This document shows positions 12,901-45,978 of a stretch of DNA of 64,000 nt, piece by piece (position 1 is the first letter of the stretch; each line of letters opens with the position of its first letter). Under the pieces are notes generated by a model. The model saw only the letters and a list, made by a program, of their open reading frames with translations, was not told the origin of the DNA and did not search any database. A program made the translations under genes and the position numbers. The stretch is taken from positions 21,204,001 through 21,268,000 of the forward strand of contig NC_135258.1 in NCBI RefSeq assembly GCF_964204865.1, written 5' to 3'. Origin of the DNA: Styela clava (lineage: Eukaryota).

Positions 12901-15900
12901 ATGAAGATATGCTGGGAAAACATCATGAGCTTTATGGTGACATGGACTACACTTACGAATTCTTTTGAACTACTGGTCTACAATGAATGTCCTTTGATCA
13001 AACGTTGCGGGTAACTTTTGTAACATACGAATTATACTACCAATGCTGATTGTATTAGTTATTGTTCATCTTTCTCACACCTTGCCACTGGAGAACCATG
13101 ATATTTTCAGCAATTTACAATATCAGAAGGAATAAAAATTGATTAAAGGGCTTAGTTCTATGGCTAACTATCGGGACTTGTCCAGTCTTGTTATAAGGCA
13201 AGATTGGATATAAGATAACAGCACAAAGTTTGGGGTACACATGCTTGGAATTTGAGAATTAGGCAGAGAGAAGTTCGGAAACCATCACTTCACAATAGCG
13301 AGGAGTCCAGTAATACACTCACACAGGGGCGCAGACAGCCGGGGGGTTGTATGGGTCGTAACCCCCCCGTTTGAGAAAAATATTTTGAGCTGAATTTTTT
13401 TCTACAAAAGAGCAACAGCGACGTTTTACTGTCGCGCATCGTGGTTTTGCGGTCAAAACAATATTATTCTGTGTGTTATCTATGTAGCGCAGTTAGCACC
13501 GCCAGAATTTTATCGTCCTTACGATATGTTATCTTTTTTAGTTGGCGCTGATAATGATAAATGAGAATGTGTAATTGTTGATTGCAATTCGGTGAGGCGT
13601 ATTTTCCTTTCTCTCCATGAAACGAGGTCAACCGCCGATGTGAGCGCTCAAAAGGAGATTTGTGTTTAATTTGTGTTGTGAATGCACTCCTTAATAGTTG
13701 TCTTTAACATTTTCGCCGAACTCACAATTTTGTCCGAAATATAAAAACCAAACTACGATATCCGCCGTTGAGTGAAAATTAATATTTGCTAGTGGTTAAA
13801 AAAAAGTTGTTTAATATAGTGTAACAACATTAATTGAAGTGTCGGCCGCCGAAACGATCGCGATGACAAAAAATTTACTGCAGCCTTTGATTATGACAAA
13901 ATTATGAAATAAAAAACGCCACAAACGGAGTTTTCAGTATAGTAAAATCCGAAAAAAATATGTATTGTCACGGCGATCGTTTCGGCGGCCGACATCCCAA
14001 TTAATGTTGTTTAAAATGACAATACTCATTATTCGATGTTCGTTTCGAATTCGAATACCTCGATTACGATTTTGCCCGCCACTAATCACGGCGCATGTAA
14101 ATAATCATTGGATGGCAATAAAAAATCAACTTCATTGACAATAAATTCCAAGTAATAGTTTCACATTTCACGAATTTGCTCGGCGCTACATGCGAGGGTG
14201 TTTTTGTAAGTATAAACCGTTATGACGCTAGTTATAAGTTCTCTCCAAAATTAGTTTTCGCGATTTTTAATGTTTTATTTTTAAATGCGGGTACCCACTG
14301 ACTACAGATAAATGGTCGATGTTTGAAATAGGACTTGCAAAATATTCACCAAACACCACCAGGCAAAGAGAGGCGGTCTACAGGTAACTGTGGAATTTCG
14401 CTGTGAAGGACGCATACTTTTCAGTTTATTAAACGCCTTACGTCGTCGTGAATTGCACTTTTGGTGCACTGTTTTAATTTCACCGTAACCCCGTTAGAAA
14501 ATTCTGGCTGCGCCCCTGCACTCACACATAGTCATCTTCTACAAGATTAGACCCAACATAGTATGCTAATGAGTGGTACAAATGCTTAAACCAATCCAAT
14601 TGCCAAAATCATTGGTATTATCCCAACTGTAACTTACATAACATGAAACAGTGTTTGAATATTCAAATGTAATATATTAACAGCTGTACAGAGGATTCAA
14701 AAATTGAGGGAGGAATTGTAATATCATGTAAGAACATCACCACCAATGATCTACAAAAATTGCCACTGGAAAACATGACCAGAATAACTATAATAGGTAT
14801 ACTGTCAAGTGTCAAGTCTATAATATAAATTATTTTTCTGATAATAGAGTTATTTAACTGTCGGTACTTATTTTATATTAACATGTTAAATCGAGGAAAG
14901 GTATAATATGTTATTATTTTCAGTGATACTCAAGTTGTCACAATAAGATAATATAAAAATAGCTGAAATACTAGAAATCTGTGATTTTTTTTCTCATTCA
15001 GACTCCACTTTCCAAGACCCCGCGGACATTGGAATATTACGAAAAAGCACATTAAATACAATGAAGAATATTACAGTGTTTGCCACCGAGATTAGTCATT
15101 TTTCTTGGGAATATATGCCAGGTTAGAATTATGGAGGAAGAAAACATTACAAAAAGGAAAAATCTATTTCTGATAATATCTAAAGACTTGGTATTGTAAT
15201 ATAAAATTCTAGTTGCTTGAAGTCAAATAAGTAATGACAGCTCTAATATATTTTTCTATCACTCTAGTTTACATTCATCATTAATTTCAGACAACATTAT
15301 GAAGATAACTCTTGGTAAAACAAAAACAAAAAATATATTTTCAAGCAAAGAACTGAAACCAGATGGAACTTTCATATATGAATGTGGGATGCAGCATATA
15401 AAGGTGAGTGATTATCTGGATTTACACAAAAAAATATCTACAATATAAACTAGAGCTGCGTGCAGCTTTAACAGGCTTCCCGCGTAAAAAAAAATTTGCA
15501 TTTTATTGCTAGCTGAGAACTTCTGCACATTTGAGGTGAATTTCAAGTTTGTAGGACCAATTTGAAAAAATAATAATAATAAATAAATAATAATAATAAT
15601 AAAACACAGGAATACAATAGGTTCCCTGCTGACAAGCAGCGGGAAGCCTAATAAACTATTGTTTCTAAAAGCTGTTAAATAAATCAAAAGCTTCAAATTA
15701 AAGAGTCAATAACATTATAGCAGAAATCAAAATTCTGGTTTGCCGAAACAATGAAGAACTAGCCTGAAGAAATACCATGGTTGAACAGTAAGCAAAAAAC
15801 TATCAAATTTAGGGACGAAATATAATGACCCCTGGGACTCATATAAAATATGAAAAAAAAATTAAGATTTCCAGTGCCTTCTTCCATTTCAGTGAATGAA

Positions 15901-18900
15901 TTTGTACATTGGTAGCATAGAAAAGCATATTTCCACAACAACCCCAACAATTTAAGAAGATGAGCATAGTACAATCTGTACCCCAATATTCCCCATCTAT
16001 CTTCCAATCATTAAACAACTGAAAAGCTCACACTCCATATTGATCCTTGGCTAACCGAAATTGAAATCGAATAAATTGATCATCCTAATTTGGCAAATTA
16101 GGATGATCAATTTATTTGATTTCAATTTCAACTTCCTACGCTTTTATCGTGGGCCACTTTTTATGTTTCAGAATAAGATATTTTGTTGATAATTTTCAGA
16201 ATATTACTGCCCTGTATCTGCTGAGACAGGAAGAAATGAGAACAATTCCTCCATGCCTACCCCCAACACTGGCAAGATTGTCATTCAAAAGCGCAGATTT
16301 GTCAAGTCTTGGCGAAGACAGGGATGACGATGGCAGAACCACAATTATATGGCCTGAATCTTTGAAGATATTGCAATTTTCAGATAATAACATTACAACT
16401 CTTGCAGATAGAGTATTTGCTAATTCCCCGCAAAGTTTAACTCGGATCATATTTCGAAATCAGCCTATAATGAATGGAGCTTTTTTACTTAAACTGCCAG
16501 CTTCCACACTTTTAAATCTAAGACTCCAAAGTGCACCAATTGCATCAATTTTTGGGAGGCATTTTGAAAAATTTCGAAAAGAAAACATACTACAACATCT
16601 TGCGATAACGTACTGCAATCTGGTAGCAATACCTATGGGCATACCAACATCAGTTTCAAGTCTTCATTTAGAAGACAATAAGATCAAAGTAATAGATCCA
16701 ATGGCAGTGAAGGACTTGACAAATCTCAAGTATATTGGATTAAAGAGAAACTTGCTGAAATTTATATCCGTTGGACTTCCAAAAAGTTTAGAAGATATCC
16801 AGCTTCCACACAACCAAATTCTCTCTTGTCACACTGAAGCATTTATTGAACTTAAAAACTTAACTACTCTCAACCTATCCAACAACAGGTGTATTTTTTA
16901 TATTTGATCACAATTAGTTCAGATTGAAGTTAAAGTATACCTTATCAAACCTATAAAAGTGTAATGAAAAACAAAAGAAATGAAAACTAAATTGAAAGTT
17001 TTGTAAATTTGTCATAATGCATCAATTATTCAAACATTTAAAAAAAATAATAGATCTGATACTTGAAGGTTGAAATCCAACTACTCTGCTCAATCTGTTG
17101 AAACTTATTTCCTGAATTCATGAATTTCTAATTCAATTCTCAATTTTTTTTTCAATTTGTATTACTTGAAAATTCAACTGCTATCGATTCAAAATCATGT
17201 TTTAAAATCATTCCATGGGTTTACCATAACCAAACGCTTTTTCCCCGACCTTTAGACTTCAGAAAAATTCTTCCTATACTTTACCATTGCAAAATTTTTG
17301 ATGCTTATTTTAAGAGAAGTTTCGCGAATTGGCGCTATAAAATGGTTTATATGTTTTGAACCAGCATTTTTGATTGCTGTAATTAAACTAAAACTCAAAG
17401 GAAAATAAAATTATCATTGAGTTATTTGATTCATAATTTACAAAACACAACTACAATCTAACAAATAGCATGCAAAAATGTTTACAACCATGCCTAAATA
17501 TCTGTCTGAGTGACAAATGTGTCTGAGCGGCTGCTAAAACGTCTATTGTTATTACGTCAGTTTTTGCATCTTGTTGATTAGCCAATGTTACGGAAGTAAA
17601 CAAGAAAGTCTATGCTCTGGGAAGCATTTATTACTAATATTAATCTGAATACCAATTTCAATCTCAAATTACCCCATATTAATGAGAACTATTACACAAT
17701 TCAGGTTGATGAACATTCCCACAGGTATTTCGCATGGTATTTTACATTTCGATGTGCAAGGAAATCAAATATCAGAGATTGGACCACATTCGAACTATGA
17801 ATTCTGTGCCAACTGCAAAGTGTTTAACATTTTTGATAACCCATGGGCTTGTAATTCAAATATGATAAAATTTTTAGTCTGGATAAGTAAACCCAATATC
17901 AGTAAAACAATATCATCTGACATAAATAAATATGTGGAATGTGAAACTGGAATGCCAGGTATTATTTTCTACTATTATTACTCATTTTAAAGCCAATTGT
18001 ATGGCGAAAATTGACTTACAATTTGCATATCAATAGGAAAAATATAATCATATAAGCTTGTTTTAGAAAATTTCACCATAGCATTTTTTGCGCTCAAGGA
18101 TATTAATATCATTGAGATATGTGGTGATTAGTATAAATACTTAATATGGCTTTCAAACTTTTTTACAAAAAAGCTACAATAATTGTGTTTGAAATAAACA
18201 TTGAGATTGTGCAAAATGTTCTTATTTGTATTACCATAAATACTATTGCAGGTCTGAATGATATGATTTTGGAGAAAATTATGAGCACTTTGATAATATT
18301 TCAAAAGCTTGGTTGCTTCTATAATGTGGCAGTTCTGAATTGTACATCAAGCAAAATGGAGACAATCCCAAGAATCGAAAATAATTTGAAGAAGGCTATA
18401 ATTGTCAATAATGCATTGCCTATGAATGGAACTGATTATGTATTTTATGGACAAAAATCCTTAACAAGGTAAGTTCTGATAATTTGACTGAAATACATTT
18501 GGATAATAATAAACTTATCATATTTGGAAGAAGGATATAAAATTTGGCACACTATTAAATTTCAACATGTACTGGAGACGTATGCTAAATTAATAATTAA
18601 TTTAAAACTGTTAACAACTTCGCTTTTAGAGTTCAACTTGAAAATATTGGATTATTTTGGATACCGAGAGGTTTACCAGAAAGTATATTATACCTGAGCT
18701 TGGCAAACAACAAAATATCAAGTCTTTCTGAAAAAGATGGAGAAGCTTTGAAGAATCTAACAAATGTTCGAGAAATAAACCTGAAGAACAATAAACTATT
18801 TACAATGCCAATGAATCACATACTATCGTTATCCTACTTAGAGATGGTAGACCTGTTTGGAAATCCATTGGTATGTCATTTCACTTATTCTTACAAACAC

Positions 18901-21900
18901 ATTCAAGAACATTCTTCATCATTTACCATCGCTATCTAATTAAAAAATATAACAATAATACAACAGCTCCAGAATGAATGTTTATTTCAAGTTTCAATCG
19001 CTGTTTCAACAAAACTGTGTTACTCATATTGCAAAGTGAAATTTGTTAAAGAGTTGGATATGATTATGTTGGCACTGCAGGGTGATTCAAACCCTCCGTG
19101 TACCACTATAGCCAATGCTGAACTGGGAAGTCAGTTGTCCAGATGATTGTTAAAAGTAGAGACATGAAAAAAATTCATAAAAAATTATGTCAGCAGTTGA
19201 ACCGAACCTCGAAATAAAAAGTTCCCTAACCCCACTCGTCTTGGCTTTGAGTTTTTTTCTCAGAAGCTCACTCATATCTGCTTACATCTGAACAAACAAT
19301 CTTCCCGTATACAATTGAGTCACTATAATTTTGTTACAGATATGCAACTGTGAATTATGGCCCTTCATTGTTTGGCTATATGAGAAGGAACACCAGGAAA
19401 GATTAGAGAACAATGGAGAAATAAATCAACATGGTACATGTCATGCACCCATGGATAAGATTGGAACTGATATCACATTTTTAAAAAATTATTTCTGGTA
19501 CATTTCCAAACTATTGATAACATTAAAATATGTTGATAATTGCCTAACATTATTCTGAATCAGTTATACATATATTCTTCATAGGTATGAAAAACCATGT
19601 ATTCAGCATACCTGTGAATGGGACAGAAAATATCCAGACTTGGATTGTTCATACGGCAAAGCAATGGTACTTCCTTGTATTTATACTTCAATTTGCCCCA
19701 TTAATATAAATTTGATATAACATTGGTTATAAACTCAAATATATTTTTTAGGAAATCTCCAAAAACTACACAGATATAATGGGTCAATTGCCGGCTATAG
19801 CACGAAGCGGATATTGGAAGAAAATTAAATTGAGTGGGCTGGGATTGCAAAATACAAAAATAAGATTGAATCATTTGTATGGTTTGATAAACATCAACTT
19901 GTCAAGTAACCCATTAGCTTATATTATTCCACTATTTTTTCACACTAAAATTTATCAATTATCGAAATTGGACACAATTTCAGTGTCTTTCAAGGAAAGG
20001 ATATTAAATCTCAAGTCGAATAATATAATGAATTTTTGCCCGAATTCTTTTTTCTAAAAATTCGTCTTATACCTTATTATTGTGAGAGTTATGTTTCATA
20101 TATTTAGATTTTCGTTGAACACATTTATTTTTAGTTTTTCTTTCAGGGTGCTGACTGATTGAGTGTCATCTCAAATGATTCCCAACAGCGTAATTGCGTA
20201 ATTAAACAGTACTGCAAGCAAATATTAGCATTTTGGAAAACTATGTTCATGTGTCACTAGAAAACTAAACTTGACTGAAGAAATAGGAGTTTGTTTCATT
20301 TGACTTAACCAGTTTTCATTTCAATATCAAATGCCTCCAGAAAGTGACAAAGTTACATGCCACTCATATTTTGTCAGGAGTTTTTAGCTGAATGAATTGC
20401 ATCTTACTTTGAAGGCTTGCCTCGGAAGGATTGTGACTTTAATCAATTCAACATAAAAAATAATAAGCACTGCTAACTTTTTCAGATAATTCATTGAACA
20501 GTTTTCCTCTTGTTGGATTACCTGGTACTGTGCAAAATCTGACTTTAAAGAACAATAACATAAGCTCACTGCCAAGTATTGAAGGCATAAAGCGGCATCT
20601 GCCAGATTTGAAATATCTTGATCTGCAGAAGAACAAATTAACGTATGTATTGGAAAATAAAAACTTAAAACAATGTATAATACTATATTTTCACATTAAA
20701 GTTTTATAATCCGGAATGTCTTGTTTACACAGATCATTGAATGAACACGATGTCCAATTGTTCCCGCTGCTAACGAAATTTCTGTTACATCAAAATCCAC
20801 TGGTTTGTGACTGCAAACTAAGACCGTTTGTGGCATGGATTGCAGCAAACCATGACAATCCCAGTGTTATGAGAAGTCATGAATTAGAGGTAATTGGGAG
20901 CACACGGACAATAAATAACTTTTGTTCTGAAAATCTTTATGGGGAAATTTTCAATAATAAGGCATCAGATAGAATGGATGCAAAAGGTTCAGCATATTCG
21001 CAGTGACACAAATACCGTATTTTCCAAGTAATAGGTCTATAAGTAGAGGTCAATTTGTAAAACTAAATATCAGGGTTTTTCTATATTATCGTCGAACAAG
21101 TCAGGGCAGAAAAAATTGGTTACTTTGTTTTTCCGTTTGTCAGAGCACCAATATGCGCTTATAATTTAATATGGCTATTTTGTAAGTAAAATCATGTTTA
21201 TTTCATCTCTTGTAAAATCATTTCCATGGAATTCACTATTCTGCCTAACAAAGCCATATTCAGCATTAAAAGGGTAGCTTGGAGCGTTGCAATATTCTTT
21301 TAAAAAGAATGAAGTCAAAACACAGTATAAAGTCAAATACCAGTAGCTATTGGAAGACCGTTTAGCATCGAATACATTTTAAAATATATCCTACTCAGAG
21401 ATAATTAAGCTAGAGAAGGCTAATGCAAAAAAAAAAGCTAACCACAGAAAAAAACACAGGCCCAAGTCAACCAATAAAATGACCCCTGAAAATCAGGTCC
21501 AAATATTGAGTCCAGAAAATCGTCTTACGGTAAAAAAATATGGTATGTGATACTTTGCTGATTTAAAACGAATTGCAAAATGTTGTCTGCTATTATTTTA
21601 TCTTGCAGTATCCAAATTGTTCACTTGGTTTTCAAATGGTTTTCACTTTGTTTCCAGTAGATTCTCTCAAAAAACTTGTTCCTATGGCTTGCAACATACT
21701 ACTGAGAACTAATCAAATTGAAACCCCAAATCATACCTAAAACCTATATTATTTATTTTGGCAGAGACTGACATGCTATGCTCCATGGAACTTAGCAGGT
21801 GACTTAATCATGAATCTTACAGAAGCGAAATATTGTCCAGATGTCAACGTTGGTGTGATAAGTGGTGGATTGGTTGCTGGAGTGTTGTTTCTCATTGTCC

Positions 21901-23941
21901 TAGCAATTGCATGCAATATATACATGCACAGAGTAAGCTGAATTATTCTTATAATGTATAAATGATGATAAATCTAGAGCTATTTTTTATGTTTTCTGAA
22001 AAAAAAAGCAGATAACTGACAGTTATTCAAAATGTTAATAAACAATGGGAAATTTAAAAAATGTGGATTATATCAATAACAACTATTTTTCGAGAAATGC
22101 AAGATTCGAGAAAAAGAAGCCATATTGCAAGGTTTTCGAGAATTATTACAGCAGGAAGCTGGATTTGATGACACCGATCCTGAAACTGGGGTGAACATGA
22201 TTGAACCTACAAGATTTAAGTATGATGCATTCGTATCTTATGCACCACATGAAGAAGACACAGAATTTGCAATGTGGCTTCTGGATGTGAGTAATAGTTC
22301 ACAAATACAGTAATGAAAAGTATGAATACAATACATCCATTTCAAAAGATTTATTGGCTATGTACAAAGATTGCTTTAGTCAAGTGTATATAGTAGAAGT
22401 AGTATATAATAGAAATTATTAATTTATCTTGAGAGCATTATGTCTCACTTCTCACTTGCAATGTATAATATTTAACACCGCCACAAAAAACCCAATTTTA
22501 TGTTTTTTGGTTGTTTCTGTATACAATTGTTTATTTCATATCAATAACAGTCAGAATTTTGCTAGTTTCAAATTTATTTCATCAAGTTTGCTTGAAGTGA
22601 GGTCCCTGCGGAGTGCATAGGCTTGCTATATTTAGCTATATACATATATATTAACTGGTGACCGTACATTCGAACCCACGAACATTTGAACCCATGTGTA
22701 TATCCGCGGGTTCAATCTATATGCGGGTGCTAAAACCCATGGGTTAGGGTTAGGATGGGTTCAAATATCCGTAAAACAGAAAAAATTTTCATAGGTGCAC
22801 TAATATGCAGGTGCAATTGTCGTGAGTTCAAATGTACGTGGGTTCAAATGTACATGGGTTCAAATGTAATGGAACCATATTAGCTATATTATACATATCT
22901 AATGTTTTTTGTTTTATATTTGGCAAAAGGGGTGCATGCAGCACATTTGTGTTTTAGGCCAATAGGTCTTGTGCATGCATCCCGTCTTAAATAATAATAT
23001 TTGTCAATTTATTTATTTATCACTATTACGAAACGAATAAACATACATACATTTTTTTGTGTATGCCGCCTTTCATAAAATCACAAAAAGTCATATGTTT
23101 AAAACAAAGCTTGGTACTGATAACCAATTATTATTCGGATGAAAGCTCACATCTGAATTAATTGTTTATTCTTGAATTATATTTATAATTACTTTGACTA
23201 CAACCAACAAGAATATACTATTTTACTCCACAAAAAATTCAATATACTCACACAAAACTTTACAGAGAAAACTCATAAAATTCAAAATAAAATTATTTCA
23301 GGAGTTGGAGATTGAACAGAACTATAAGCTATGTGTACATGAGAGGGATTTTGTCCCAGGAACTGGTATAGCAGATAACATTGTGGAATGTATCGGTGCA
23401 TCAAAGCGCATTATTCTAATTTTATCAAACCATTTTGTAACAAGTCCATGGTGTCAATATGAAGTTCAAATCGCACTTACAGAGCTCCATCAAAAGAGGA
23501 AAAGCAAACTTCTTGTACCTATTTTGCTGGAGGTACGTATGATTGTAAACCCAATAAGAATTTGATAATATTCTTAACATTGCAAATCCTCAAAAGCTAT
23601 TCAGTGAAGCTTAATATTCAAGAAAAATCCATTACATTCCAGTAAAAACCTGATTCTCGATTACTGTTGGAATACAGAACTGAGATAAAACTTAGTTAAA
23701 AATACTATTTTTAATGATTCTAAAAACAAGTATCTACAGAAAGTTATCTTATTTACTCTTTGCTGCATAATTTCACTTTCAGGAACTGGATGGAAAAGTA
23801 GAAGGAAGTGTAAAAACGTTTTTATCATTGATAAAAGGTATAAGAATACCACATAACCAGAGTCATTCTCAGTGGACTGTGTTCTGGAATGAAATTAAAG
23901 AAGCAATGCCAGAAGAACCAATTCAAGATAGCATTGTATGA
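12901..23941 (+). CDS. Toll-like receptor A (multi-cysteine-cluster type), ~1104 aa, 17 coding exons
   Basis: Exons 12901-13010, 14684-14796, 15002-15121, 15291-15403, 16200-16888, 17705-17958, 18252-18468, 18630-18870, 19340-19497, 19585-19666, 19752-19905, 20486-20642, 20733-20889, 21765-21932, 22095-22286, 23302-23532, 23783-23941 (3315 nt, in frame). LRRs present; LRRCTs NPWACN, NPLICNC, NPLVCDC; TM VISGGLVAGVLFLIVLAIACNIYM; TIR YDAFVSY / CVHERDFVPG / SPWCQYE / FW. Confidence 0.88.
13324..14518. mobile_element. Non-autonomous hAT DNA transposon in TLR-A intron 1
   Basis: TIRs caggggcgcagacag / ctggctgcgcccctg; perfect 8-bp TSD cactcaca (13316-13323, 14519-14526); internal inverted repeat ~13829-13870 / ~13966-14009; a partial second copy lies at 51157-51994. 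Confidence 0.9.
16057..16129. repeat. Near-perfect palindrome (36-bp arms, 1-nt loop)
   Basis: gaaattgaaatcgaataaattgatcatcctaatttg-g-caaattaggatgatcaatttatttgatttcaatttc, with one mismatch. Confidence 0.9.
17240..17510 (+). repeat. Dispersed repeat, copy 1 (TLR-A intron)
   Basis: Colinear similarity to ~60420-60790 (ccccgacctt..gaaaaattcttcct.tactttaccattgcaaaatttt..; aattaaa.taaaactc; tctgtctgag). Confidence 0.7.
21015..21543. mobile_element. Tc1/mariner-pogo (Tigger-like) MITE
   Basis: TA|ccgtattttcc ... aaaaaatatgg|TA termini with TA target duplication. Confidence 0.6.
22657..22877. mobile_element. Small foldback MITE-like element with central GGGTTAGGGTTAGG
   Basis: Terminal inverted repeats tggtgaccgtacattcgaaccc / gggttcaaatgtaatggaacca; tandem acatt(c/t)gaaccc and gggttcaaatgt subterminal units. 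Confidence 0.6.
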
Positions 23942-24080
23942 GAGAGAAATTGGCAGCAACTCATAAAATGAGAGCATGCTAATGGGTTCTGCAGAAGCAC
24001 ACTTAGAGACTGAAGAAATCCCATAAAAACTTGGAATAAAAATGGAAAACAATGGAATTCGATATCTTGTGTGTCTAACT

Positions 24081-24373
24081 CAATGGTTCTCAAAAAGTGG
24101 GGTGCGCCTCATATGCGTAAAGAATTTTTTGAGTGGTGTAAACCAAATAAAAAATAAAAATATTTGTTAGATTTGATCTTGCCAGCCTTATTTTGGACAT
24201 TTACATTTCAAAACTTTCCATATATTTTATTATTTACTTTCCATCCCTGCATTTTCAACATGTTTTTTGAATAAAACATACTTTCCCTTTACTATTCGTT
24301 ATTTGTAGCTTATTTTTAGCTACCGTAGGTATTTTTGAGGTGGGGCGCAGCTTAAAAATTTTAAGAACAACTG
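24081..24373. mobile_element. hAT (Charlie-like) MITE between TLR-A and TLR-B
   Basis: TIRs caatggttctcaaa / tttaagaacaactg; perfect 8-bp TSD gtctaact (24073-24080, 24374-24381). Confidence 0.85.
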
Positions 24374-25100: not shown

Positions 25101-25110
25101 GGGAATTTCC
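25101..25110 (+). promoter_or_regulatory. Consensus NF-kB site GGGAATTTCC upstream of TLR-B
   Basis: Exact GGGRNWYYCC match ~220 bp 5' of the TLR-B ATG; function untested. Confidence 0.4.
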
Positions 25111-35800: not shown

Positions 35801-37204
35801 GGCTTCCTAGCCAACTTGTCAAGCTTAGTATGATCGGAAACAGAATCGGGGATTTCACACAAAGAGACTTGGCCACATTGAACAATTTAACATCCTTGCA
35901 ATTCCTCAACATCAAAAACAATCGTATCAAAACATTGCATGCCTGGCAATTCGAAGCTTTGCCAAACTTACAGTGGATTGAGTTGGCTGAAAACCAGTTG
36001 GTAAATCCTAAATCACATAATTTTATTTTTTGCTTCTACATTAAATACTCCCTGTAGATATCATTGTTATACAACATTGCATGAGAGTTTCATGAAATCA
36101 TAAATGTATTCAGATATGTGATTGCAACCTTCTATCATTTGTGACATGGTATGGAAAAATGGCGCCAAGAGGAACGAACCAAATTACTATGAGTTACCCA
36201 ACTTGCTCATTACCTGCTGATGTCAAAGGGAAGGATATACGCCAGCTTTATGGATACTATTTGTGAGTATGAAGACATTTAAACTTTAAAGTATATGAAC
36301 AAAAATGAACAAACAACAATCAGTAAATCAAATACACAAGGGATATTGCATATTATAAGACAACTAACAAAAAGTTATCAAGTACCTATTTTTTCATTAA
36401 GATATAAGTTACAATGTGTGCCTTCTGAATGCAGTTGGGATGGACAATCAGGATTATTGGACTGTTCTGCAGAATATCAAGTTAGTCAAAATTGAAATCT
36501 TTGTCTAAATTTGAATCCAAAATTTTGACATATATTTCTTCGGCAACTAAGAATACTGCATGGATTTAAATATTACCTATGCCAAATATCATCAAATTAA
36601 TTTAACCTAGGTAACTACGAAGACAATCTTAAAGTCAAAACCAAAGGCAAATTTTCATCATGCACCAGTAATTCCACCAAGCTCACAATGGACTTCATTG
36701 AATTTGAGTGGACTGAAACTAAATAATAGCCAGATTCAATACGAACATCTCACACAGCTGAAAACGATAAATTTATCAGGTAAGAAAGCATACAGAACTA
36801 TGAAGTATTAATCACACCACACAATTTACAAAAATAATTCAAATCTTTAATACCTTTACAGACAATGACTTGACGAAAATACCAGTTGAAGGATTGCCAA
36901 AAAGTATTAAGAATGTTCAAATGAATGGTAACCCAATTGCAAATGCTCCCAAAACAAAGAATAAGTCATGGATGAAATTGACCTCACAACAGATAATTAG
37001 GTAGGTGCTTAAAATTAGAATACCAATTCCCTGTATAGCCTCCCTATGTAGCCTACTGTACATCACAATATTCACATTATTCAATGTTACAGAAAATTGA
37101 AGAAAAAAAGTATGCAGCTGTATCAAAAAAGAAAACAAATTTCTAATATATTGAAGATGGTTGAAAAGAGACTGCTTTCACTTCAGCACCGCAAGAATAA
37201 CTAA
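32882..37204 (+). CDS. TLR-like LRR protein C lacking TM and TIR (candidate secreted form), ~829 aa, 12 coding exons
   Basis: Exons 32882-32997, 33074-33207, 33333-33452, 33671-34427, 34975-35222, 35320-35545, 35760-36000, 36114-36262, 36402-36480, 36611-36779, 36862-37000, 37093-37204 (2490 nt, in frame). Signal peptide MKISVSKTCIQVYAVALFLLINLKDLQA. Exons are homologous to TLR-D exons 1-11. No TM or TIR exons were found before the next paralog starts at 38830. The last exon is the least certain. Confidence 0.78.
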
Positions 37205-38511: not shown

Positions 38512-38518
38512 TGACTCA
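38512..38518. promoter_or_regulatory. AP-1 consensus TGACTCA upstream of TLR-D
   Basis: Exact 7-mer ~310 bp 5' of the ATG; may be chance. Confidence 0.2.
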
Positions 38519-38829
38519 TTTTCCTGATAAAGTGAACTTCTTGGACTCATTGATGCGATGGCTCATACAGTAGAAACCCTATAGAAACCATATGTTAAGG
38601 TGCAGAGTTACATTAATAACAGTCAATGTCTACGATAAACAACAATATACCAGTCAAGTCAATTATTTATCATATGTTGAAGCAAAAAATTGAAATTTAT
38701 TGTTATGAATTAAGACTTGAAAGGTACTGGAAAGAGTACTGGAGAATTAAGATCACTCTGATGTTATCTTTAATTAGCTTTAGTTTTTTTTACTAATTCA
38801 GATAAAGTTTGATTGTAATATAGACAGTG

Positions 38830-41800
38830 ATGGAATTAATTTTAAAACGGACTTGGATATTTGCAGTGTTCATAAGTATCAACATTCTTCATCTTCATGG
38901 TGCAATCAACAAATGTCCGGGTATAAAAGGATGTGTGTGAGTTATTTTGCATTTCGCAATATTTATACAGAAGGCTATATAAACAATATTTCTTATATTA
39001 CAGGAAATGCTGATAACTTGAATTAGTTTTTATGCAACTATTCATTCCTCATCAAAGGCTTCAATGAAAAATAGGCAGAAATCACGAAATATTGAAAAGT
39101 GGACAACTTTTGTAAAACTTAATTGCCCAAATAGATTAATTTTCACTTGGATTTATTAGGAATTGTAAAAGCTTATTTGTAAATGTTTTTTCACTTGTAT
39201 TCGTGTATATACACATGCCTGTATTCGATTTATACAAAACACTACAAGAAAACGTTGCAAATTAACTAGATTCAACAACAGTACGCGGTTTCGAATAATT
39301 TCCTAAATACAATTACAGGTATACAACATCCATTTTAAATGGATCAATGTAACAGGTGATTGGTGAGTCGAATTAACATCATTAACTTATATTTAATATA
39401 ATTGCCAACTACAGGTGTGACAGGATCTGGAGTAGGGATGGTATTCGATTCAGATGTAGTGAAGCAGAAGATCCACCACTTCATCTCATACCACATGAAA
39501 ATATAACATCGATTTTATTTATAAGTAAGTGTTTTATATTAATACAACATTTCAATGCAAAGTAAAACATGACAACAAATGTCAATTTTTCAAACATTTG
39601 ATTCAGGATCAACTTTTCACAATATATCAGCAATATATGAACTACGGAAAACTAATGCAAGGAGAATATCGTTAATTGAAAACAAGTTTGTACACAAAAA
39701 AATGACTTCGCTGAATTGGAACTGTATGCCAAGTATGTTGTTATTACTGGTACATCAAATCTTTTGAATAGTAAGCTTTATATGAAATCCTACAAGTTTT
39801 ATCAGTAGTTTTTAACAGAAAGAAATGATATATATTTATATAAACTGTGATTTATTGTAATTTATCAATACTTCTAATCAGCACAATAAATACTCTCTAT
39901 ACCCAATGAGCTCCATTCAAGTAATGATGGTGTGAATTGAATCAAGCCAAACGTTCAATGTTCATAATTACCTCAATATATTATGGTAAATATTGTTTTT
40001 GCAGGCACAATATTCAATATTTCTGTATCAGAAAACGGCTTTGATGGATTCACAGATGGAAATAAAACGGGAATGGCATGTAGACTACACAGATTTAAGA
40101 ACAATATCACATTGCAGATAAGAGGGGAAAATATTATAGGAATGCCAGAATGCATACCCGAAAGTACTAGCACCCTCATTCTCAACAATATGCCTGCAAG
40201 CAATGAAACTCAACCTGAAGTAAAATGGCCGGAAAAGATATCCCTATTAAAAATAGTTGGAGGTGGAATGAAAAATTTTTCTAAAGCTTTTGCAGATGCA
40301 CCCAGCTCCTTGAAACGAATATGGATACATAACGGCATTCTTGATGAAGGGAAATGGCCAACAGGATTACCAGCAAACTTCGTAGAAAAGTTGATCCTGA
40401 CCCATTCAAAAATGCATACCATTTCATCTACGGAAATGAAAAGATTTCAGAAAGCTAATAAATTAAATACACTCATCTTGAATTATAATAATTTGAAAGA
40501 CATTCCAAAAGATCTCCCCTTATCATTGATCAACCTACAAATGTCTCACAACAAAATCTACCAAGTGTCACCAAAAAACTGGGAAAATTTGTCAAACCTG
40601 AAATTTTTAGATTTATCTAATAATCTTCTGGTGATGGTACCAAGACAAATGCCTTCTACATTACAAACATTATACTTCCATGGAAATTTGATAGAATTCA
40701 GTGACCCAGAGGCTTTCATTGCAATGAAAAACTTGGAGGTACTTGATCTGTCAGATAACAAGTAAGTGTATTTGATAACCAATAACAATCATTAGCTTTA
40801 CAAACTACCCAGTATGGACAAAATCACGTTGACATATTGGCAGAATAACTTTCAATAACGCTCTAAACATCCCTAAAACACCCCTGCAGTGATGACCAGG
40901 ATAAATTTTTCAAGATGAATTTGATCAAATCTTAGTTTTTCACACAACAGCAGATAACTTTATTTTACTTTTTTACAATCAAGGCTATCATCTATGCCAA
41001 GAGGAATCCAGCCTGGAATACAGAAATATTTGATCACCCACAATCAAATATCAATTGTGAACGGGCCAAGTGATTACAACTTCTGTACAAGTTGTTCAAT
41101 ATTCCAACTGCAAGCAAACCCATGGTATTGCAACACACAAATGCTGCAAATGCTCAGTTGGCTGATAAGTCACGATATCATAATAGGAAGTTCAGGGTTT
41201 TATGAAAAAAGTGACACAGAAAATGTTGCTTACTGCAGTAAAATTCCAATAAAAGGTGAGTCCTCAAAGTTGTCAAGTCTGCAACACCAACTTAGTTAGG
41301 CCTATTGGACTAACTACTTGGACAGGCGTGGGAATCTGCAAAAAACTACCGTAATTAAATTCCATTGCAGGTATTGATATATACTGGCTGAATGTGGCAA
41401 TTGAATACATGGAATATATCAAGCAACCACCAAACGACAAATGCATCTATGAAATCGAGTATTTAACTTGTCAGGATGCGGGTCTAACATCAGTGCCAGA
41501 TCAAATTCCACCAAACTTGGAAAATGTGATAATCTCAGACAACCCAGATCTGACATTTATACCCGATGACAAATTCAAAACACAAACTGAATTGAAAAAG
41601 TAAGCAAGACCATGTTTAAATAACTATTTGACGATTGGAAACATAATGATGGCAATCTTCAACATTTCGAATCTTTTCTTTCAGATTAATTTTAAACAAT
41701 AACAGTATCAGCCACATTCCAATTGGTTTGCCAAAATCATTGATAATGCTTGAATTGAGAGACAATGAGATTGGGAACTGGAATTCAAAAGATTTGAGAG

Positions 41801-44800
41801 CACTGCAGAACTTGACAAATTTAAGACAAATATATCTTGAAAACAACAATATAAGTGTACTTTACGCTTATCAGTTCGAAGGACTGACAGAGATGAATTG
41901 GGTTGGATTGAGCAGAAATCAACTGGTAAAATACATGATAAATTGACTCTGTAATATATTAAATCTCCAAACAAAGCCTCAGACAAAACAGCAAGAAAGA
42001 TTGTGAAAGGTTACAAAGAAAGCAAAAAAACTTTACATGCATAATTTCAATGATACTAATACACACTTTATCACACAGCATTGTGACTGTTCCCTGCAAT
42101 CCTTTGTTATCTGGTTTAATGACATAGCACCAAGAGACTACAAGTTTGTCGGGCCTTCATTTCCTGAATGTAGTTCACCAGTAAGTCAACAAGGTATGGA
42201 CATCCGCCATCTACATGGACATTTCATGTAAGCTTCATTATACCGAGCAATTAAATAGGATATAATGAATCAGCGTAGTATTAGTGCTAAACAGTGCCGC
42301 AATCGAATAACTCAAACCCTTAACCGATAAACTTTGAATTGCAGTGGCGCGGAAGTTCAGTAATACCACAAAGCAGAAATTGAGTATAACAAAGTTATGA
42401 ATCTATTATATTCATAACTAGCAATATCTAATTAAACAATTAATATTGAATCATTCCTTTCCACCATAGAAAAATGAAAATCTTCTATTCTATACCTCAA
42501 TGATAAGAATTATTTCAGATATGGAGTGCAATGCGCACCAATTAGATGTGAATGGAAAAGCAACAACCGACCAATACTGAATTGTTCAAGGGCTTTTCTG
42601 GTAATTACTTGAAGAAAATATAAATATGGAGAAATTTAACAATGTAAAAAAAACATGTAACAAGATGCAATTATAGAAACCACTTTTATATATCATAAGT
42701 GACATAAATATGCATATGACATATCAAGTATAGCAAAGCCCAAGTCGCTTGAATCGCTTATCTAAATTTTCCAGTAATAATAGAGATAGCAACTAAGCAT
42801 ATTTGTATTTAGAATGATGATTCCATTAATACCTACAAACCCCCATATGAAGAAGGAATTGCTCCCGTTATTCCAGAAAACAGTTATTGGACAAGTTTGG
42901 ATCTAAGTGGATTGATGCTGAAGGATGACCAAATTCAATACAGCCATCTAACAAGGTTGATGTCGGTCAACTTATCAGGTATCACTCAATCAAGTTAAAT
43001 GAAATGAAATTCCACTTATTTCAGATGAAATACCGGTAAATTGGATAAACATAAAATTTCTTATGCAACAACTCAAAAACCAAAGAACCACTCAAAAGAA
43101 AATTTACCGTTGTTTTTCCTTTTAAGATTTGATGATTGATAAGGCTTAAAATACACAAAATATTATTTCTTTCTCTAGAAAATTCTCTCACACAAATACC
43201 TCTGACTGGATTTGGTCCATCCGTGCAAATTATGAACTTATCTCGGAATTTTATCGAACATCTGCCATCGACACAAGAATTCAAGAAATATTTTCCAAAG
43301 ATTAAGTCACTGGATTTGAGCAAGAACAGAATCAAGTATGTAGCGATAATGTCCAAATCAAACCAAATAGTCTTAAGCAGTTTTCAAATACCACGACCCC
43401 GCCAAATATCGTTGTAAGTGTTAATCAGAATAATATCGAATCGTTGACAAATGCACATATTCACACTCACTTATATTTAAAACATTTTACCTTGCTCCAA
43501 TTGGTCTTATTTTCTAGGTTTGCATATATATTTATAATACAATATAACTTATAATATATACTGGTAATTCCCTATTCTCAGATACAAGAAAAATTCAAAT
43601 TTCAATTATTTCACACATATCTTCACTACGAAAGTCTACGATGAAGCATTATTAAAGCTTAATTACTGTTCAGTTGGTTTTTAATAAACTGAAATGTGGT
43701 GTCAAATTTCATAATGTGTTAATGAATGAATACGATAAAGAAAATACAAAGTGCTGTTCTACAAAATGTACAAAAAAATAGCAAAAAACAAGTGGCAGTC
43801 AAGAAACTGCATTGACATCAAGTATATGATTCATAGCAGGTATCCTTGGAAACTACTTTCGTTAATTTGAATGAGAAAACGTCAGCCAGCATGACTTAAC
43901 ACTTGAAATATTACTCATCGATAATTAAAGTTAAGCAACATTGCAATTTTATAGACACCTTGATTTTGTGGAAGTTGGAACATTGGAGTTCGTAGATACC
44001 TTATTGCTGACCGGAAATCCTTTCATTTGCAACTGTTCACTTAGAACATTAGTTGAATGGATTCATGTGAACAAAGAAAACACCAAAATGGTGCGTCAAC
44101 ATCAGTTACAGGTCAGTTTGATCAAGAATGATTCATATTTCATACATCAGTGGTTCGCCTTTCCTCTGCCCCAGGATAAATATGTAACTGAATGAAGCTT
44201 GCGATTAGCAGTGGCAAAACTACAACTGGTAACCGTTGCATGATTTTCATTGAGAGACAGAGCCTACCAGAAGGTCGTACTACATTCCCATTGTACTTCT
44301 AAACATTTCACCAAATTCTCACCTTTTTCTAAATGTTTAAAACAACATTTCAAAATATTAATTGAAAATATTGAAATCAATTTCTTTGGGCTTGTTTCAC
44401 TCGTAAACCTACAATCTTATTATAAACATGTCGAATAAGCTAGCGGAGAATTATAATCCAGTTGGTTTTATGTCTGGTGACATGCGGAGTTCTAGAGGTA
44501 ACATTGTGGAAGCCCAATGGAGTCTTGCTGGTTTAATAACCAGAGAATTTTTTTTTTCAAGGAATTAACTTGTAAAACAAGTCAACGAAGAAACGCAAGA
44601 ACATTGCAGATAATGTCAACTAAAGATGAAGAGTATTGTCCTGAATTACCAGTAGTGACGATCATCATTAGCATACTATCATTCATACTCATCTGTGTCA
44701 TAATCGTGTTTATTGTCCATGTTTATATGCAAAGAGTAAGTAGGAATTTGTTTATCAGAAATATTTTTTAGTTTTTTTTCAGTGGTTTACCAATTCCTAA

Positions 44801-45978
44801 GGAAGTTTGTGGGATTGTTAGAGTAACGAGCATAATAAGCACCTTTTGTATTCTATCTCATGTCACATACTAAGGAAAATTCTGAAATTTGCCGAATGGA
44901 ATCTACTTGTCAACTTCAAGTTCAAAGTTTGCCCAACTCAATAAAGCATTAAAATCAATTGAAAAATGATATTAAAATCTGTTTACAGCAACGAACCAAA
45001 AAAATACATGAAGAAATACTGCTTGGGTTCCAAGGTTTACTGGAAAAGGAAATAAAAGAAGGTGAACGAGATCCAGAAACAGGCATGGGATTGGAAAAAG
45101 AATTGAAATTTGATGCTTTTGTTTCCTATGATGCTAATGGAGCGGATGCTGAATTTGTAATGACACTTCTAGAGGTAACAAGTGACCAAATTATGTTATA
45201 TAACTTTATTCAATGTTGTCCTGAAATTCCTTTGCTTTTGCTTAAATTAGGATTTTAGGATGCAACACTACTGATATGATTGCAAACTTTGTAAATGTAA
45301 TTGGTTGTTTTCATAATGTGGATTGTACGACATAGAAATAAATATCAGCACAGCCTTGATTAGAATATGATATTTAGTCAAAACCAGGAAATATCCTTTG
45401 TTAAGGAACTGGAAGACAAGCGAGGATACAAGCTTTGTCTGAATGAAAGAGACTTTATGCCTGGTGCTGGTATCACTGACAACATTGTTGAATGCATTGG
45501 AACATCCAAACGTATTATCTTAATCTTATCAAGAACATTTGTGTCAAGTCCGTGGTGTCAGTATGAAGTGCAAGTTGCATTAGCTGAACTTCATCATAGA
45601 AGAAAAAGTCAGCTACTCATTTCACTTCTTCTTGAGGTATAAATTAATTAATTTACTCATAATTTAAAGATGATTTAAAGTAATATTACTACCGCTCAAT
45701 CTATTGATTAACCTTAAACACCATGGTTTTCAATAATAGAATATCAGTACAAATTTAATTTAATGAACAACAAGGTAATGACATAAACTCAAAACAAATA
45801 TAAAAACATTTTACAGGATATATCAAGTGATGAAAACCTTGCCAGCAGCGTGAGAACATTTTTGTCATTGGTTCCAAGTATACCTGTTCCTGCTTACACA
45901 GCAAATGATAATGAAACTTGGAAAAAGTTCTGGAGAGAATTATTAAACATGATGCCAAATCCATCTAATATCATTTGA
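38830..45978 (+). CDS. Toll-like receptor D (multi-cysteine-cluster type), ~1101 aa, 16 coding exons
   Basis: Exons 38830-38936, 39415-39524, 39607-39732, 40005-40761, 40984-41255, 41371-41599, 41685-41925, 42079-42227, 42519-42600, 42813-42978, 43179-43335, 43955-44111, 44562-44735, 44989-45174, 45406-45636, 45817-45978 (3306 nt, in frame). Signal peptide; LRRCTs NPWYCN, NQLHCDC, NPFICNC; TM VVTIIISILSFILICVIIVFIVHVYM; TIR FDAFVSY / CLNERDFMPG / SPWCQYE / KFW. Confidence 0.9.

What the first reader, a model, noticed from the sequence alone, without database searches (positions are those of the whole stretch)
12901..45978. Tandem cluster of intron-rich TLRs with a three-module (triple LRRCT) ectodomain
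Seen: each complete paralog is SP-[LRRNT-LRRs-LRRCT]x3-TM-TIR. For example, TLR-D has LRRCTs NPWYCN (exon 5), NQLHCDC (exons 7/8) and NPFICNC (exon 12), and the first two are each followed by a new Cys-capped N-flank. The genes have 16-17 coding exons. Known: vertebrate and most sea-urchin TLRs have a single cysteine cluster and few introns; Drosophila Toll-type receptors have two clusters; Ciona has very few TLRs. Inference: this is an unusual three-module TLR subfamily that expanded locally and long ago, with strongly diverged ectodomains and conserved TIRs.
Basis: partly seen in the sequence, partly recalled or inferred. Interest (0 to 1): 0.75.

Follow-up and report, generated by a model that had tools for sequence, protein, structure and literature searches.

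The report
Sea-squirt cluster of three-module Toll-like receptors

Summary
Window 12901-45978 carries four head-to-tail, + strand, intron-rich TLR genes (A-D). A and B share the plan (17 exons each, predicted). C stops after exon 11 and has no LRRCT3, TM or TIR. Profiles of the three C-caps hit C-terminal caps of solved LRR proteins: LRRCT1 and LRRCT3 clearly, LRRCT2 weakly.

The genes are co-orthologs of Ciona Ci-TLR2. They are colinear with it from residue 21 to 1072, are reciprocal best matches, and share a supported TIR clade. A Clavelina protein has the same three caps. [quoted passage not shown] By definition (two or more C-flanks) these are multiple-cysteine-cluster TLRs.

What I found in no paper searched is the four-gene tandem expansion, which is this genome's whole complement of the type, with ectodomain exons 24-60% identical and the core TIR exon 64-73%.

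The joined protein was never searched.

The parts
12901..23941 (+). TLR-A, complete paralog, 17 predicted coding exons. SP/LRRNT1 in exon 1 (12901-13010); LRRCT1 NPWACN in exon 5; LRRCT2 NPL|ICNC across exons 7/8; LRRCT3 NPLVCDC in exon 12; TM in exon 13; TIR in exons 14-16.
   Evidence: Predicted exons: 12901-13010, 14684-14796, 15002-15121, 15291-15403 (4a), 16200-16888 (4b), 17705-17958, 18252-18468, 18630-18870, 19340-19497, 19585-19666, 19752-19905, 20486-20642, 20733-20889, 21765-21932, 22095-22286, 23302-23532, 23783-23941. Pfam TIR E 3.2e-19 on 23176-23562. The spliced unnamed ORF P0004 matches exons 9-16 piece by piece. No RNA laid on A.
25330..30994 (+). TLR-B, complete but most deviant paralog, 17 predicted coding exons. 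Cap 1 reads NNKWLCDD; the first TIR motif reads FDCFVAS.
   Evidence: Predicted exons: 25330(or 25366)-25457, 25819-25946, 26014-26127, 26216-26948, 27075-27346, 27408-27483 (6a), 27760/27772-27927 (6b), 28004-28244, 28454-28605, 28689-28776, 28971-29136, 29229-29385, 29529-29685, 29756-29920, 30073-30255, 30431-30658, 30851-30994. Pfam TIR E 2.7e-16 on 30431-30700. No RNA laid on B.
32870..37004 (+). TLR-C, truncated paralog. It has exons 1-11 (SP, modules 1 and 2 with their caps, LRRNT3, first LRRs of module 3). No LRRCT3, TM or TIR was found. The 3' end is not resolved here.
   Evidence: Exons 32870-32997, 33074-33207, 33333-33452, 33671-34427, 34975-35222, 35320-35545, 35760-36000, 36114-36262, 36402-36480, 36611-36779, 36862-37000+. 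tblastn with D exons 12-16 gave no colinear hit between 37000 and 38800; one weak off-register match of exon 12 fell on C's LRRCT1, 35078-35176, E 0.010. The TIR exon search of the whole genome found only A, B and D.
38830..38936 (+). TLR-D exon 1: start codon, signal-peptide-like segment, first half of LRRNT1 (CPGIKGC).
   Evidence: Loose ends of contigs in X2 and X6 before 39415 match 38907-38936. Donor is GTGAGT. An in-frame stop lies at 38821.
39415..39524 (+). TLR-D exon 2: second half of LRRNT1 (C-x12-C) and first LRR.
   Evidence: Joint 39524/39607 GT..AG in X1, X2, X6; translation.
39607..39732 (+). TLR-D exon 3: LRR.
   Evidence: Joints 39524/39607 and 39732/40005.
40005..40761 (+). 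TLR-D exon 4: main LRR solenoid of module 1 (about 8-9 repeats).
   Evidence: Pfam LRR_8 E 6.1e-15; joints; LRR-like motif count.
40984..41255 (+). TLR-D exon 5: last LRR of module 1 and LRRCT1 (NPWYCN ... C; Cys at residues 34, 37, 49 and 84 of the exon).
   Evidence: Joints in X2 and X6. Alignment A2 of the four paralogs has these Cys invariant. The profile hits caps of FLRT3 (E 9.8e-7), VLR, Slit2, Nogo receptor and GPIb-alpha.
41371..41599 (+). TLR-D exon 6: LRRNT2 (C-x8-C) and first LRR of module 2.
   Evidence: Joints. Pfam LRRNT weak, E 0.039, below cut-off. Profile A6 aligns to N-terminal cap/first LRR of TLR4, biglycan, decorin, VLR and TLR3; the top hit is a bacterial LRR protein, SspH2.
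41685..41925 (+). TLR-D exon 7: LRRs of module 2. It ends with NQL, the start of LRRCT2.
   Evidence: Pfam LRR_8 E 2.5e-10; joints.
42079..42227 (+). TLR-D exon 8: LRRCT2 (HCDC ... C).
   Evidence: Joints. Alignment A3. Profile hits are weak: SLITRK1 E 0.034; 18 of 19 hits are C-caps of LRR proteins.
42519..42600 (+). TLR-D exon 9: LRRNT3-like Cys cluster (C-x4-C-x11-C).
   Evidence: Joints. Cys invariant in 4 of 4 paralogs. No LRR hit in the PDB search, 0 of 11, so this rests on the Cys pattern and its position only.
42813..42978 (+). TLR-D exon 10: first LRRs of module 3.
   Evidence: Joints; 41-60% identity to A, B and C.
43179..43335 (+). TLR-D exon 11: LRRs of module 3.
   Evidence: Pfam LRR_8 E 6.1e-8 on 43136-43414; joints.
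43955..44111 (+). TLR-D exon 12: last LRR and first half of LRRCT3 (NPFICNC).
   Evidence: Joints. Profile A4 hits caps of LRRC26 (E 2.8e-6), Slit2 (6.3e-6), GPIb-alpha, Nogo receptor, Drosophila Toll 4lxr (5.4e-4) and TLR4.
44562..44735 (+). TLR-D exon 13: second half of LRRCT3 (two Cys) and a hydrophobic transmembrane-like segment (about 44646-44726).
   Evidence: Joints; translation. No TM predictor was available; the segment was read directly.
44989..45174 (+). TLR-D exon 14: juxtamembrane part and start of TIR (FDAFVSY).
   Evidence: Joint 44735/44989; donor GAG|GTAACA read.
45406..45636 (+). TLR-D exon 15: core of the TIR domain.
   Evidence: Pfam TIR E 2.2e-17 on 45364-45639. Loose ends behind 45175 in X1, X2 and X6 match 45407 onward. 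61% identical to Ciona TLR2.
45817..45978 (+). TLR-D exon 16: end of TIR and stop codon.
   Evidence: Phase and acceptor TTACAG; homology to A and B and to Ciona TLR2 residues 1032-1072. Not covered by the laid stretch.

Best explanation
The region is a tandem array of four paralogs of the ascidian 'TLR2-type' Toll-like receptor, co-orthologous to Ciona Ci-TLR2. It is the only place in this genome where the type occurs.

Shown here: A, B and D encode about 1100-residue type I membrane proteins. Each has a signal peptide, three separately capped LRR blocks (roughly 11-12, 5 and 5 repeats in D), one membrane-spanning segment and a TIR domain. With three C-flank cysteine clusters and internal N-flanks they belong to the multiple-cysteine-cluster (P-type) structural class. 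D is transcribed and spliced as one unit.

Inferred from published work on Ci-TLR2: the ectodomain binds microbial patterns at the cell surface and in endosomes. Ligand-induced pairing brings the TIR domains together, and MyD88-type adaptors then activate NF-kB.

Inferred from the sequence pattern: the paralogs keep the signalling core while their ectodomains have drifted far apart, so they probably differ in ligand range. C, which lacks cap 3, TM and TIR, cannot signal by itself. It is either a secreted or decoy form or a decaying copy.
For: - Architecture and splicing of D: (12 of 12 GT..AG joints; one 3763-nt contig; none of the joints in the DNA-like run).
- Domains: Pfam LRR_8 and TIR above cut-off.
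- Caps. Ciona TLR2 against solved structures aligns each module through a C-cap: residues 261-444 with FLRT2 118-303, 469-620 with an LGR4-VLR chimera, 719-855 with TLR8 658-792 and Toll 640-773.
- Orthology: the best named hit of the TIR exon among 1.84 billion representatives is Ciona TLR2. Exon-by-exon colinearity over residues 21-1072. In the reverse search, 19 of 21 matches fall in this cluster. TIR clade support 96/97. A full-length Clavelina relative has 45% identity and 98% coverage.
- Whole complement of the genome.
- Conserved intron plan: 32 of 34 acceptors and 33 of 33 donors have a phase-matched site near the position expected from D (a permissive test).
- Function of Ci-TLR2: NF-kB activation by zymosan, heat-killed Legionella, poly(I:C) and flagellin; plasma membrane and endosomes; gut and haemocytes (PMC3342246, passages).
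- Three-part ectodomain of CiTLR2 in an AlphaFold3 model: PMC12816324, section 3.2.
Against:
- LRRCT1 has an unusual Cys spacing: one Cys in place of CxC, plus a CxxC in the preceding repeat.
- LRRCT2 has only weak PDB support (best E 0.034). LRRNT3 has none.
- Pfam's LRRCT model missed all window pieces. It reached only E 0.0011, below cut-off, once, in the Clavelina protein.
- The RNA label of runs X1-X9 is the tool's guess. Only D was laid, so expression of A, B and C is unknown.
- B has a degenerate first TIR motif.
- Function is extrapolated from a Ciona protein tested in human cells.
- The organism name (Styela clava) comes from earlier notes and was not tested by me.
Confidence: 0.85

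Rival explanations
1. The receptors mainly serve development or cell-cell guidance, like protostome multiple-cysteine-cluster Tolls, and not microbe sensing. On this view the segmented, Slit-like ectodomain would bind endogenous protein ligands.
For: They belong to the mcc structural class. After Ciona and Clavelina, the next-best full-length matches of Ciona TLR2 are Slit proteins (E 2e-31 and weaker), ahead of Tollo at 7.6e-27. Among 112 fetched proteins of 550 aa or more, only the ascidian TLR2s and Slits have three or more NPxxCxC-type motifs.
Against: Ci-TLR2 responds to microbial ligands and is expressed in gut and haemocytes (PMC3342246). The Slit scores may simply add up over several capped LRR blocks. 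No EGF or laminin-G domain appeared in the 15 D pieces scanned. Fast ectodomain divergence with tandem duplication is typical of immune receptors.
Confidence: 0.12
2. Only part of the array is functional: C, and perhaps B, are decaying duplicates, and the cluster is a birth-and-death relic and not a working four-receptor set.
For: C lacks exons 12-16. B has NNKWLCDD at cap 1 and FDCFVAS in the first TIR motif, and has the lowest identity to D (26% in exon 4). No RNA evidence was obtained for A, B or C.
Against: All predicted exons of A, B and C are open, with phase-matched splice sites. A B-like spliced ORF (P0009) and an A-like one (P0004) exist in other assemblies, so both lineages are kept and expressed elsewhere.
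Confidence: 0.25
3. The internal Cys clusters are not true caps. The ectodomain would then be one long solenoid with Cys-rich insertions, so only the membrane-proximal LRRCT is real and the receptor is single-cluster type.
For: Pfam LRRCT/LRRNT did not reach cut-off on any piece. One review table lists Ciona with 3 scc and 0 mcc TLRs (PMC3367398). No own structure model exists.
Against: Profiles of cap 1 and cap 3 hit solved C-caps at E about 1e-6, and cap 2's hits are nearly all C-caps. Each cap is followed by an N-flank-like Cys pair and a 'gL..vP..lP' first repeat. A published AlphaFold3 model of CiTLR2 shows three short solenoids (PMC12816324). Another survey counts one P-type TLR in Ciona (PMC8609888).
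Confidence: 0.05
4. The single long transcript is an assembly artefact, and the modules are separate neighbouring genes.
For: The tool warns that contigs cannot prove a single transcript and that the RNA label is a guess.
Against: The reading frame runs unbroken through all 15 junctions, from a start codon behind an in-frame stop to one stop codon. The same joints occur in three studies. The full-length cloned Ciona cDNA protein is colinear.
Confidence: 0.02

Closest known systems
Ciona intestinalis/robusta Toll-like receptor 2 (Ci-TLR2; NP_001159600.1, XP_078488277.1; Sasaki et al. 2009, known to me only through later papers)
   Same: End-to-end colinear. Same three NPxxCxC-type caps. 61% identity in the core TIR exon. 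Same TIR clade. Reciprocal best match. [quoted passage not shown]
   Different: One gene in Ciona against four in tandem here, one of them truncated. Ectodomain identity is only about 29-47% per exon.
Clavelina lepadiformis TIR domain-containing protein (P0168, 1106 aa, unnamed product)
   Same: 45% identical to Ciona TLR2 over 98% of its length. Carries NPWVCDQ, NPLHCDC and NPLVCDC. So the plan is shared by three distantly related ascidians; by recalled taxonomy, not looked up here, these belong to three different ascidian orders.
   Different: Annotated only as an unnamed product. Its copy number was not examined.
Multiple-cysteine-cluster (P-type) TLRs such as Drosophila Toll
   Same: LRR blocks interrupted by LRRCT-LRRNT pairs. 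The definition asks for two or more C-flank motifs plus an N-flank motif (PMC6224433; PMC8609888). Cap 3 aligns to Toll's cap (4lxr).
   Different: Three C-flanks here, against two in the two protostome-like mcc proteins I read (P0090, P0126). In the TIR tree the ascidian clade is separate and the backbone is unresolved. Ci-TLR2 senses microbial ligands directly according to PMC3342246.
Slit guidance proteins
   Same: Several short LRR blocks, each with its own N- and C-cap. Slits are the next-best full-length matches of Ciona TLR2.
   Different: Slit is secreted, has four blocks followed by EGF and laminin-G domains, and has no TM or TIR. None of those domains was found here.
Oyster sPP-type TLRs (short protostome-like with internal LRRCT-LRRNT)
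   Same: A non-standard class with internal LRRCT-LRRNT pairs, reported as absent from human, sea urchin and fly (PMC4346834, passages).
   Different: The text I could read does not give the number of caps, and figures and supplements are not held. No sequence comparison was made.

Membership tests
Toll-like receptor (LRR + TM + TIR) | Extracellular leucine-rich repeats | tested here: met
   Pfam LRR_8 at E 6.1e-15, 2.5e-10 and 6.1e-8 on D exon pieces.
Toll-like receptor (LRR + TM + TIR) | Cytoplasmic TIR domain | tested here: met
   Pfam TIR at E 2.2e-17 (D), 3.2e-19 (A) and 2.7e-16 (B), all above the 21.3-bit cut-off. Not met for C: no TIR exon.
Toll-like receptor (LRR + TM + TIR) | Single transmembrane segment between LRRCT and TIR | tested here: inconclusive
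   Hydrophobic runs of about 25 residues were read directly in exon 13 of D, A and B. No TM predictor was available.
Multiple-cysteine-cluster / P-type TLR | Two or more C-flank (LRRCT) clusters | tested here: met
   Three NPxxC(xC)-type motifs in A, B and D. Profiles hit solved C-caps: cap 1 E 9.8e-7, cap 3 E 2.8e-6, cap 2 E 0.034.
Multiple-cysteine-cluster / P-type TLR | Internal N-flank (LRRNT) cluster after a C-flank | tested here: inconclusive
   LRRNT2: conserved C-x8-C plus first-repeat motif; the profile aligns to N-terminal caps of TLR4, decorin, VLR and TLR3, but the top hit is a bacterial LRR protein. LRRNT3: conserved Cys pattern only, with no PDB support.
Single-cysteine-cluster / V-type TLR | Only one LRRCT, next to the membrane | tested here: not met
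   Two further C-caps lie upstream.
Ascidian TLR2 type (Ci-TLR2 orthogroup) | Full-length colinearity with Ci-TLR2 | tested here: met
   Best matches of 13 of 16 D exon peptides map in order onto residues 21-1072 of P0151; exons 3 and 9 gave no in-order match, and exon 13 only a weak one (E 0.003).
Ascidian TLR2 type (Ci-TLR2 orthogroup) | Reciprocal best match and shared clade | tested here: met
   Forward search. Reverse search: 19 of 21 matches at E<=1e-6 lie in this cluster. TIR exon clade support 96/97; this tree has only 77 columns.
Ascidian TLR2 type (Ci-TLR2 orthogroup) | Shared intron positions with the Ciona gene | not testable with these tools
The only evidence is a preprint's remark that one LRR domain spans five exons.
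Ascidian TLR2 type (Ci-TLR2 orthogroup) | NF-kB activation by microbial ligands | not testable with these tools
   Known for Ci-TLR2 from PMC3342246; needs an experiment.
Slit | EGF repeats, laminin-G domain and cystine knot after the LRR blocks; secreted | tested here: not met
   No such Pfam family was found in the 15 D pieces scanned; a TM-like segment and TIR are present instead.

The most novel reading that the evidence does not exclude
The ascidian TLR2 type may be a distinct, ancient 'triple-cluster' receptor class and not a variant of Toll. On this reading three short, independently capped solenoids act as separate binding units, which would explain the unusually broad ligand range reported for Ci-TLR2. 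In this sea squirt the class has split into a set of specialised receptors plus a TIR-less soluble partner that modulates them.
Probability: 0.2. Interest if true: 0.5.

Novelty: new member of a known kind. Interest (0 to 1): 0.3.

Why it matters
Tunicates are the closest living relatives of vertebrates and are usually described as having very few TLRs. This cluster shows that one of the two classic ascidian TLR types has multiplied four-fold in a stolidobranch sea squirt, with strongly diverged ectodomains and one truncated copy.

It also bears on a disagreement in the literature about whether Ciona has a multiple-cluster TLR: one table lists 0 mcc, another survey lists 1 P-type. Here the TLR2 type carries three C-flank clusters in three ascidians that, by recalled taxonomy, belong to three different orders.

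That gives comparative immunologists a natural set of paralogs for asking which LRR block binds what. It does not change the picture of TLR evolution by itself.

Tried and rejected
- A 46-row alignment that added the window's exon pieces to the full-length relatives (A1) stacked the exons of modules 1 and 2 onto module 3, because the modules resemble each other. I discarded it and drew no conclusion from it.
- Pfam's LRRCT and LRRNT models were too weak on exon pieces, so I used profiles against PDB sequences instead.
- The profile of the 27-residue LRRNT3 exon gave only chance hits.
- The word-based protein search with Ciona TLR2 returned only Ciona and Clavelina as close full-length kin, and only 8000 candidates were scored. 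It found no annotated proteins of this genome. This says nothing about their absence.
- Cluster look-ups gave no names for the exon-sized or transcript ORFs nearest to A, B and D, so I cannot say which species they come from.
- Sasaki et al. 2009 (PMC2785661) is not held. What I say of it comes from PMC3342246 and PMC12816324.
- Paper searches for 'three LRRCT', 'three LRR-CT', 'three cysteine clusters', 'triple cysteine cluster' and 'three LRRCTs' found no TLR paper.
- 'Styela clava' with 'Toll-like receptor' gave 48 papers. None of the 20 listed is, by its title, about this species' TLR genes.
- The S. clava genome paper has 0 occurrences of 'Toll'.
- Supplements were closed. Supplementary Figures 2 and 4 and Table 2 of PMC12816324 (an OrthoFinder set with three tunicate species, and AlphaFold3 models) may already show these genes or the three caps in more detail.
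- I rejected separate genes per module (frame and contig continuity).
- I rejected the single-cluster type (two extra caps).
- I rejected Slit membership (TIR and TM present, no EGF or LamG).

Full report
WHAT IS THERE. The window is AT-rich (GC 0.30-0.38) and eukaryotic. Between 12901 and 45978 the + strand carries four colinear sets of open segments with LRR, transmembrane-like and TIR content. Pfam confirms LRR_8 in the large exons and TIR (PF01582) in A, B and D, all above the curated cut-offs. Earlier notes of this scan call the genome Styela clava; I did not test that name. The sequencing-run tool codes the species as 'organism A'.

GENE D IS ONE SPLICED TRANSCRIPT. Nine runs held about a third of the sampled words of 39380-45980, as expected if they hold exons only. 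Four runs held 0.82-0.89. I laid three of the former (from three studies) and one of the latter on 39380-45379.
- All 12 joints inside the stretch have GT..AG ends. X2 and X6 show 12 of 12, X1 shows 9 of 12, and the DNA-like X10 shows 0 of 12.
- One X2 contig of 3763 nt covers 39415 to 45175 and continues on both sides.
- Its 5' overhang matches 38907-38936 and its 3' overhang matches 45407 onward.
- Phase arithmetic gives an unbroken frame from ATG 38830 (in-frame stop at 38821) to the stop at 45976-45978. That is 16 coding exons and 1101 codons.
- The last junction (45636/45817) lies outside the laid stretch and rests on phase and homology.
- The tool labels these runs 'RNA?' as a guess. The argument for RNA is the spliced form itself and its absence from X10.
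Everything below uses single-exon pieces or database proteins.

ARCHITECTURE. Read exon by exon, D is as follows.
- Exon 1: signal-peptide-like start and CPGIKGC.
- Exon 2: C-x12-C, completing LRRNT1.
- Exons 2-5: about 11-12 LRRs.
- Exon 5: NPWYCN...C (LRRCT1).
- Exon 6: C-x8-C and a 'gLtsvPdqiP' first repeat (LRRNT2).
- Exons 6-7: about 5 LRRs.
- Exons 7/8: NQL|HCDC...C (LRRCT2).
- Exon 9: C-x4-C-x11-C (LRRNT3).
- Exons 10-12: about 5 LRRs.
- Exons 12/13: NPFICNC...C...C (LRRCT3).
- Exon 13: a hydrophobic segment.
- Exons 14-16: TIR.

TESTING THE CAPS.
- LRRCT1 (alignment A2) hits the C-caps of FLRT3 (E 9.8e-7), VLRs, Slit2, Nogo receptor and GPIb-alpha.
- LRRCT3 (A4) hits LRRC26 (2.8e-6), Slit2 (6.3e-6), GPIb-alpha, Nogo receptor, Drosophila Toll (5.4e-4) and TLR4.
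- LRRCT2 (A3, which lacks the 'NPx' part because an intron splits the motif) is weak. The best hit is SLITRK1 at E 0.034, but 18 of 19 listed hits are C-caps.
- The LRRNT2 profile aligns to N-terminal cap/first-repeat regions of TLR4, biglycan, decorin, VLRs and TLR3. Its top hits are bacterial LRR effectors.
- The 27-residue LRRNT3 profile gives no LRR hit (0 of 11).
- Pfam's LRRCT model found nothing in the window pieces.
So caps 1 and 3 are well supported. Cap 2 is supported by motif, position and weak hits. N-flank 3 is supported by its conserved Cys pattern only. LRRCT1 is atypical: it has a single Cys where CxC is usual, plus a CxxC in the repeat before it.

THE OTHER THREE GENES.
- tblastn with D's 16 exon peptides finds 13 (A), 12 (B) and 10 (C) of them in order. 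The rest were located by a search for open, phase-compatible exons.
- Phase-matched AG/GT sites lie at or near the position expected from D for 32 of 34 acceptors and 33 of 33 donors. The search windows were wide, so single sites could be chance, but most are exact.
- The two misses resolve into extra introns. A's exon 4 is split (15291-15403 and 16200-16888). B has an extra exon 27408-27483 that carries the first Cys of LRRNT2.
- These models are not checked by RNA, except that an unnamed spliced ORF (P0004) matches A's exons 9-16 piece by piece.
- B is the most deviant copy (NNKWLCDD at cap 1; FDCFVAS where A and D have [FY]DAFVSY).
- C has exons 1-11. Exons 12-16 gave no colinear match behind it; the only hit in C was a weak off-register one of exon 12 on LRRCT1 (E 0.010).
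- Identity to D is 24-60% in ectodomain exons and 64-73% in the core TIR exon.

WHAT IT IS. A scan of 1.84 billion representative proteins with D's TIR exon gave, as best named full-length hit, Ciona intestinalis Toll-like receptor 2 (61% identity).
- D's exon peptides map in order onto residues 21-1072 of its 1077-residue model.
- In the reverse direction, Ciona TLR2 searched against this whole genome gives 21 matches at E<=1e-6. Of these, 19 lie in this cluster and 2 lie in an unrelated open frame on another contig.
- A maximum-likelihood tree of the TIR exon (47 rows, 77 columns, so limited power) puts A, B and D with Ciona TLR2, a Clavelina protein and 13 unnamed ORFs in one clade (96/97). 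Ciona and Clavelina sit in a sub-clade (99/98). A pairs with P0004 (93/91) and B with P0009 (92/81). The backbone to other TLRs is unresolved.
- A word-based search with Ciona TLR2 found one more full-length relative, from Clavelina lepadiformis (45% identity, 98% coverage). After that came Slit proteins.
- Of 112 fetched proteins of 550 aa or more, three or more NPxxCxC-type motifs occur only in the Ciona and Clavelina proteins and in Slits (a crude regular expression).
- Whole-genome searches with the TIR exon, exon 4 and exon 5 find only the copies in this window. The tool notes that such counts are lower bounds.

WHAT IS ALREADY IN PRINT.
- A 2026 preprint (10.64898/2026.03.26.714386; passages) describes an additional LRR domain behind a C-terminal LRR repeat, an N-terminal LRR 'broken into two parts', and a secondary LRR domain spanning five exons.
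- PMC3342246 (passages) summarises Ci-TLR2's function: NF-kB activation by zymosan, heat-killed Legionella, poly(I:C) and flagellin; plasma membrane and endosomes; gut and haemocytes.
- The mcc class is defined by two or more C-flank motifs plus an N-flank (PMC6224433; PMC8609888).
- The literature disagrees on Ciona: 3 scc and 0 mcc in PMC3367398, against 1 V-type and 1 P-type in PMC8609888.
- I found no paper with the phrases 'three LRRCT' and similar for a TLR.
- I found none on the TLR genes of Styela clava among those listed. Its genome paper does not contain 'Toll'.
- Supplements were closed. Those of PMC12816324 may show Styela orthologs.

HOW IT PROBABLY WORKS. Shown: the domain plan, splicing of D, and orthology to Ci-TLR2. 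Inferred from Ci-TLR2: ligand binding by the ectodomain, pairing, TIR-MyD88 signalling to NF-kB. Inferred from the divergence pattern: the paralogs differ in what they bind, and C cannot signal alone. A developmental role, as for protostome mcc Tolls, is not excluded.

VERDICT. This is a new, expanded member set of a known receptor type, with modest interest.

Noticed in passing
window 44157-44341 (intron 12 of TLR-D): A short stretch with about 30-fold higher summed contig depth than its surroundings in the DNA-like run (536 against 16). Several contigs break there, so it looks like a dispersed repeat. A 33-base piece recurs at 10769-10801 (94% identical).
   Followed up: partly
window 13440-14200 (intron 1 of TLR-A) and 51157-51658, 52463-52643: An element in A's first intron has 81-86% identical copies downstream of the cluster, with short inverted pieces nearby. 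It is probably a transposable element family.
   Followed up: partly
window 40924-41257: One RNA-like contig of run X1 (335 nt) runs from 60 bases inside intron 4 into exon 5 of TLR-D. This suggests unspliced precursor or intron retention.
   Followed up: no
G000 contig C14:14277681-14278610 (- strand), outside the window: A 696-residue open frame without stops matches the LRR blocks of Ciona TLR2 at E 2e-9 to 2e-7. It is probably an intronless LRR or TLR gene of another type.
   Followed up: no
window 5270-9896: Long open segments upstream of the cluster (285 aa at 5270-6124, 139 aa at 9480-9896). Another note of this scan reads them as a domesticated Crypton recombinase gene. I did not examine them.
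   Followed up: no
alignment A1: When aligned freely, the exons of LRRCT1 and LRRCT2 and the LRR exons of modules 1 and 2 stack onto module 3. The three modules therefore resemble each other enough to suggest origin by internal duplication.
   Followed up: no
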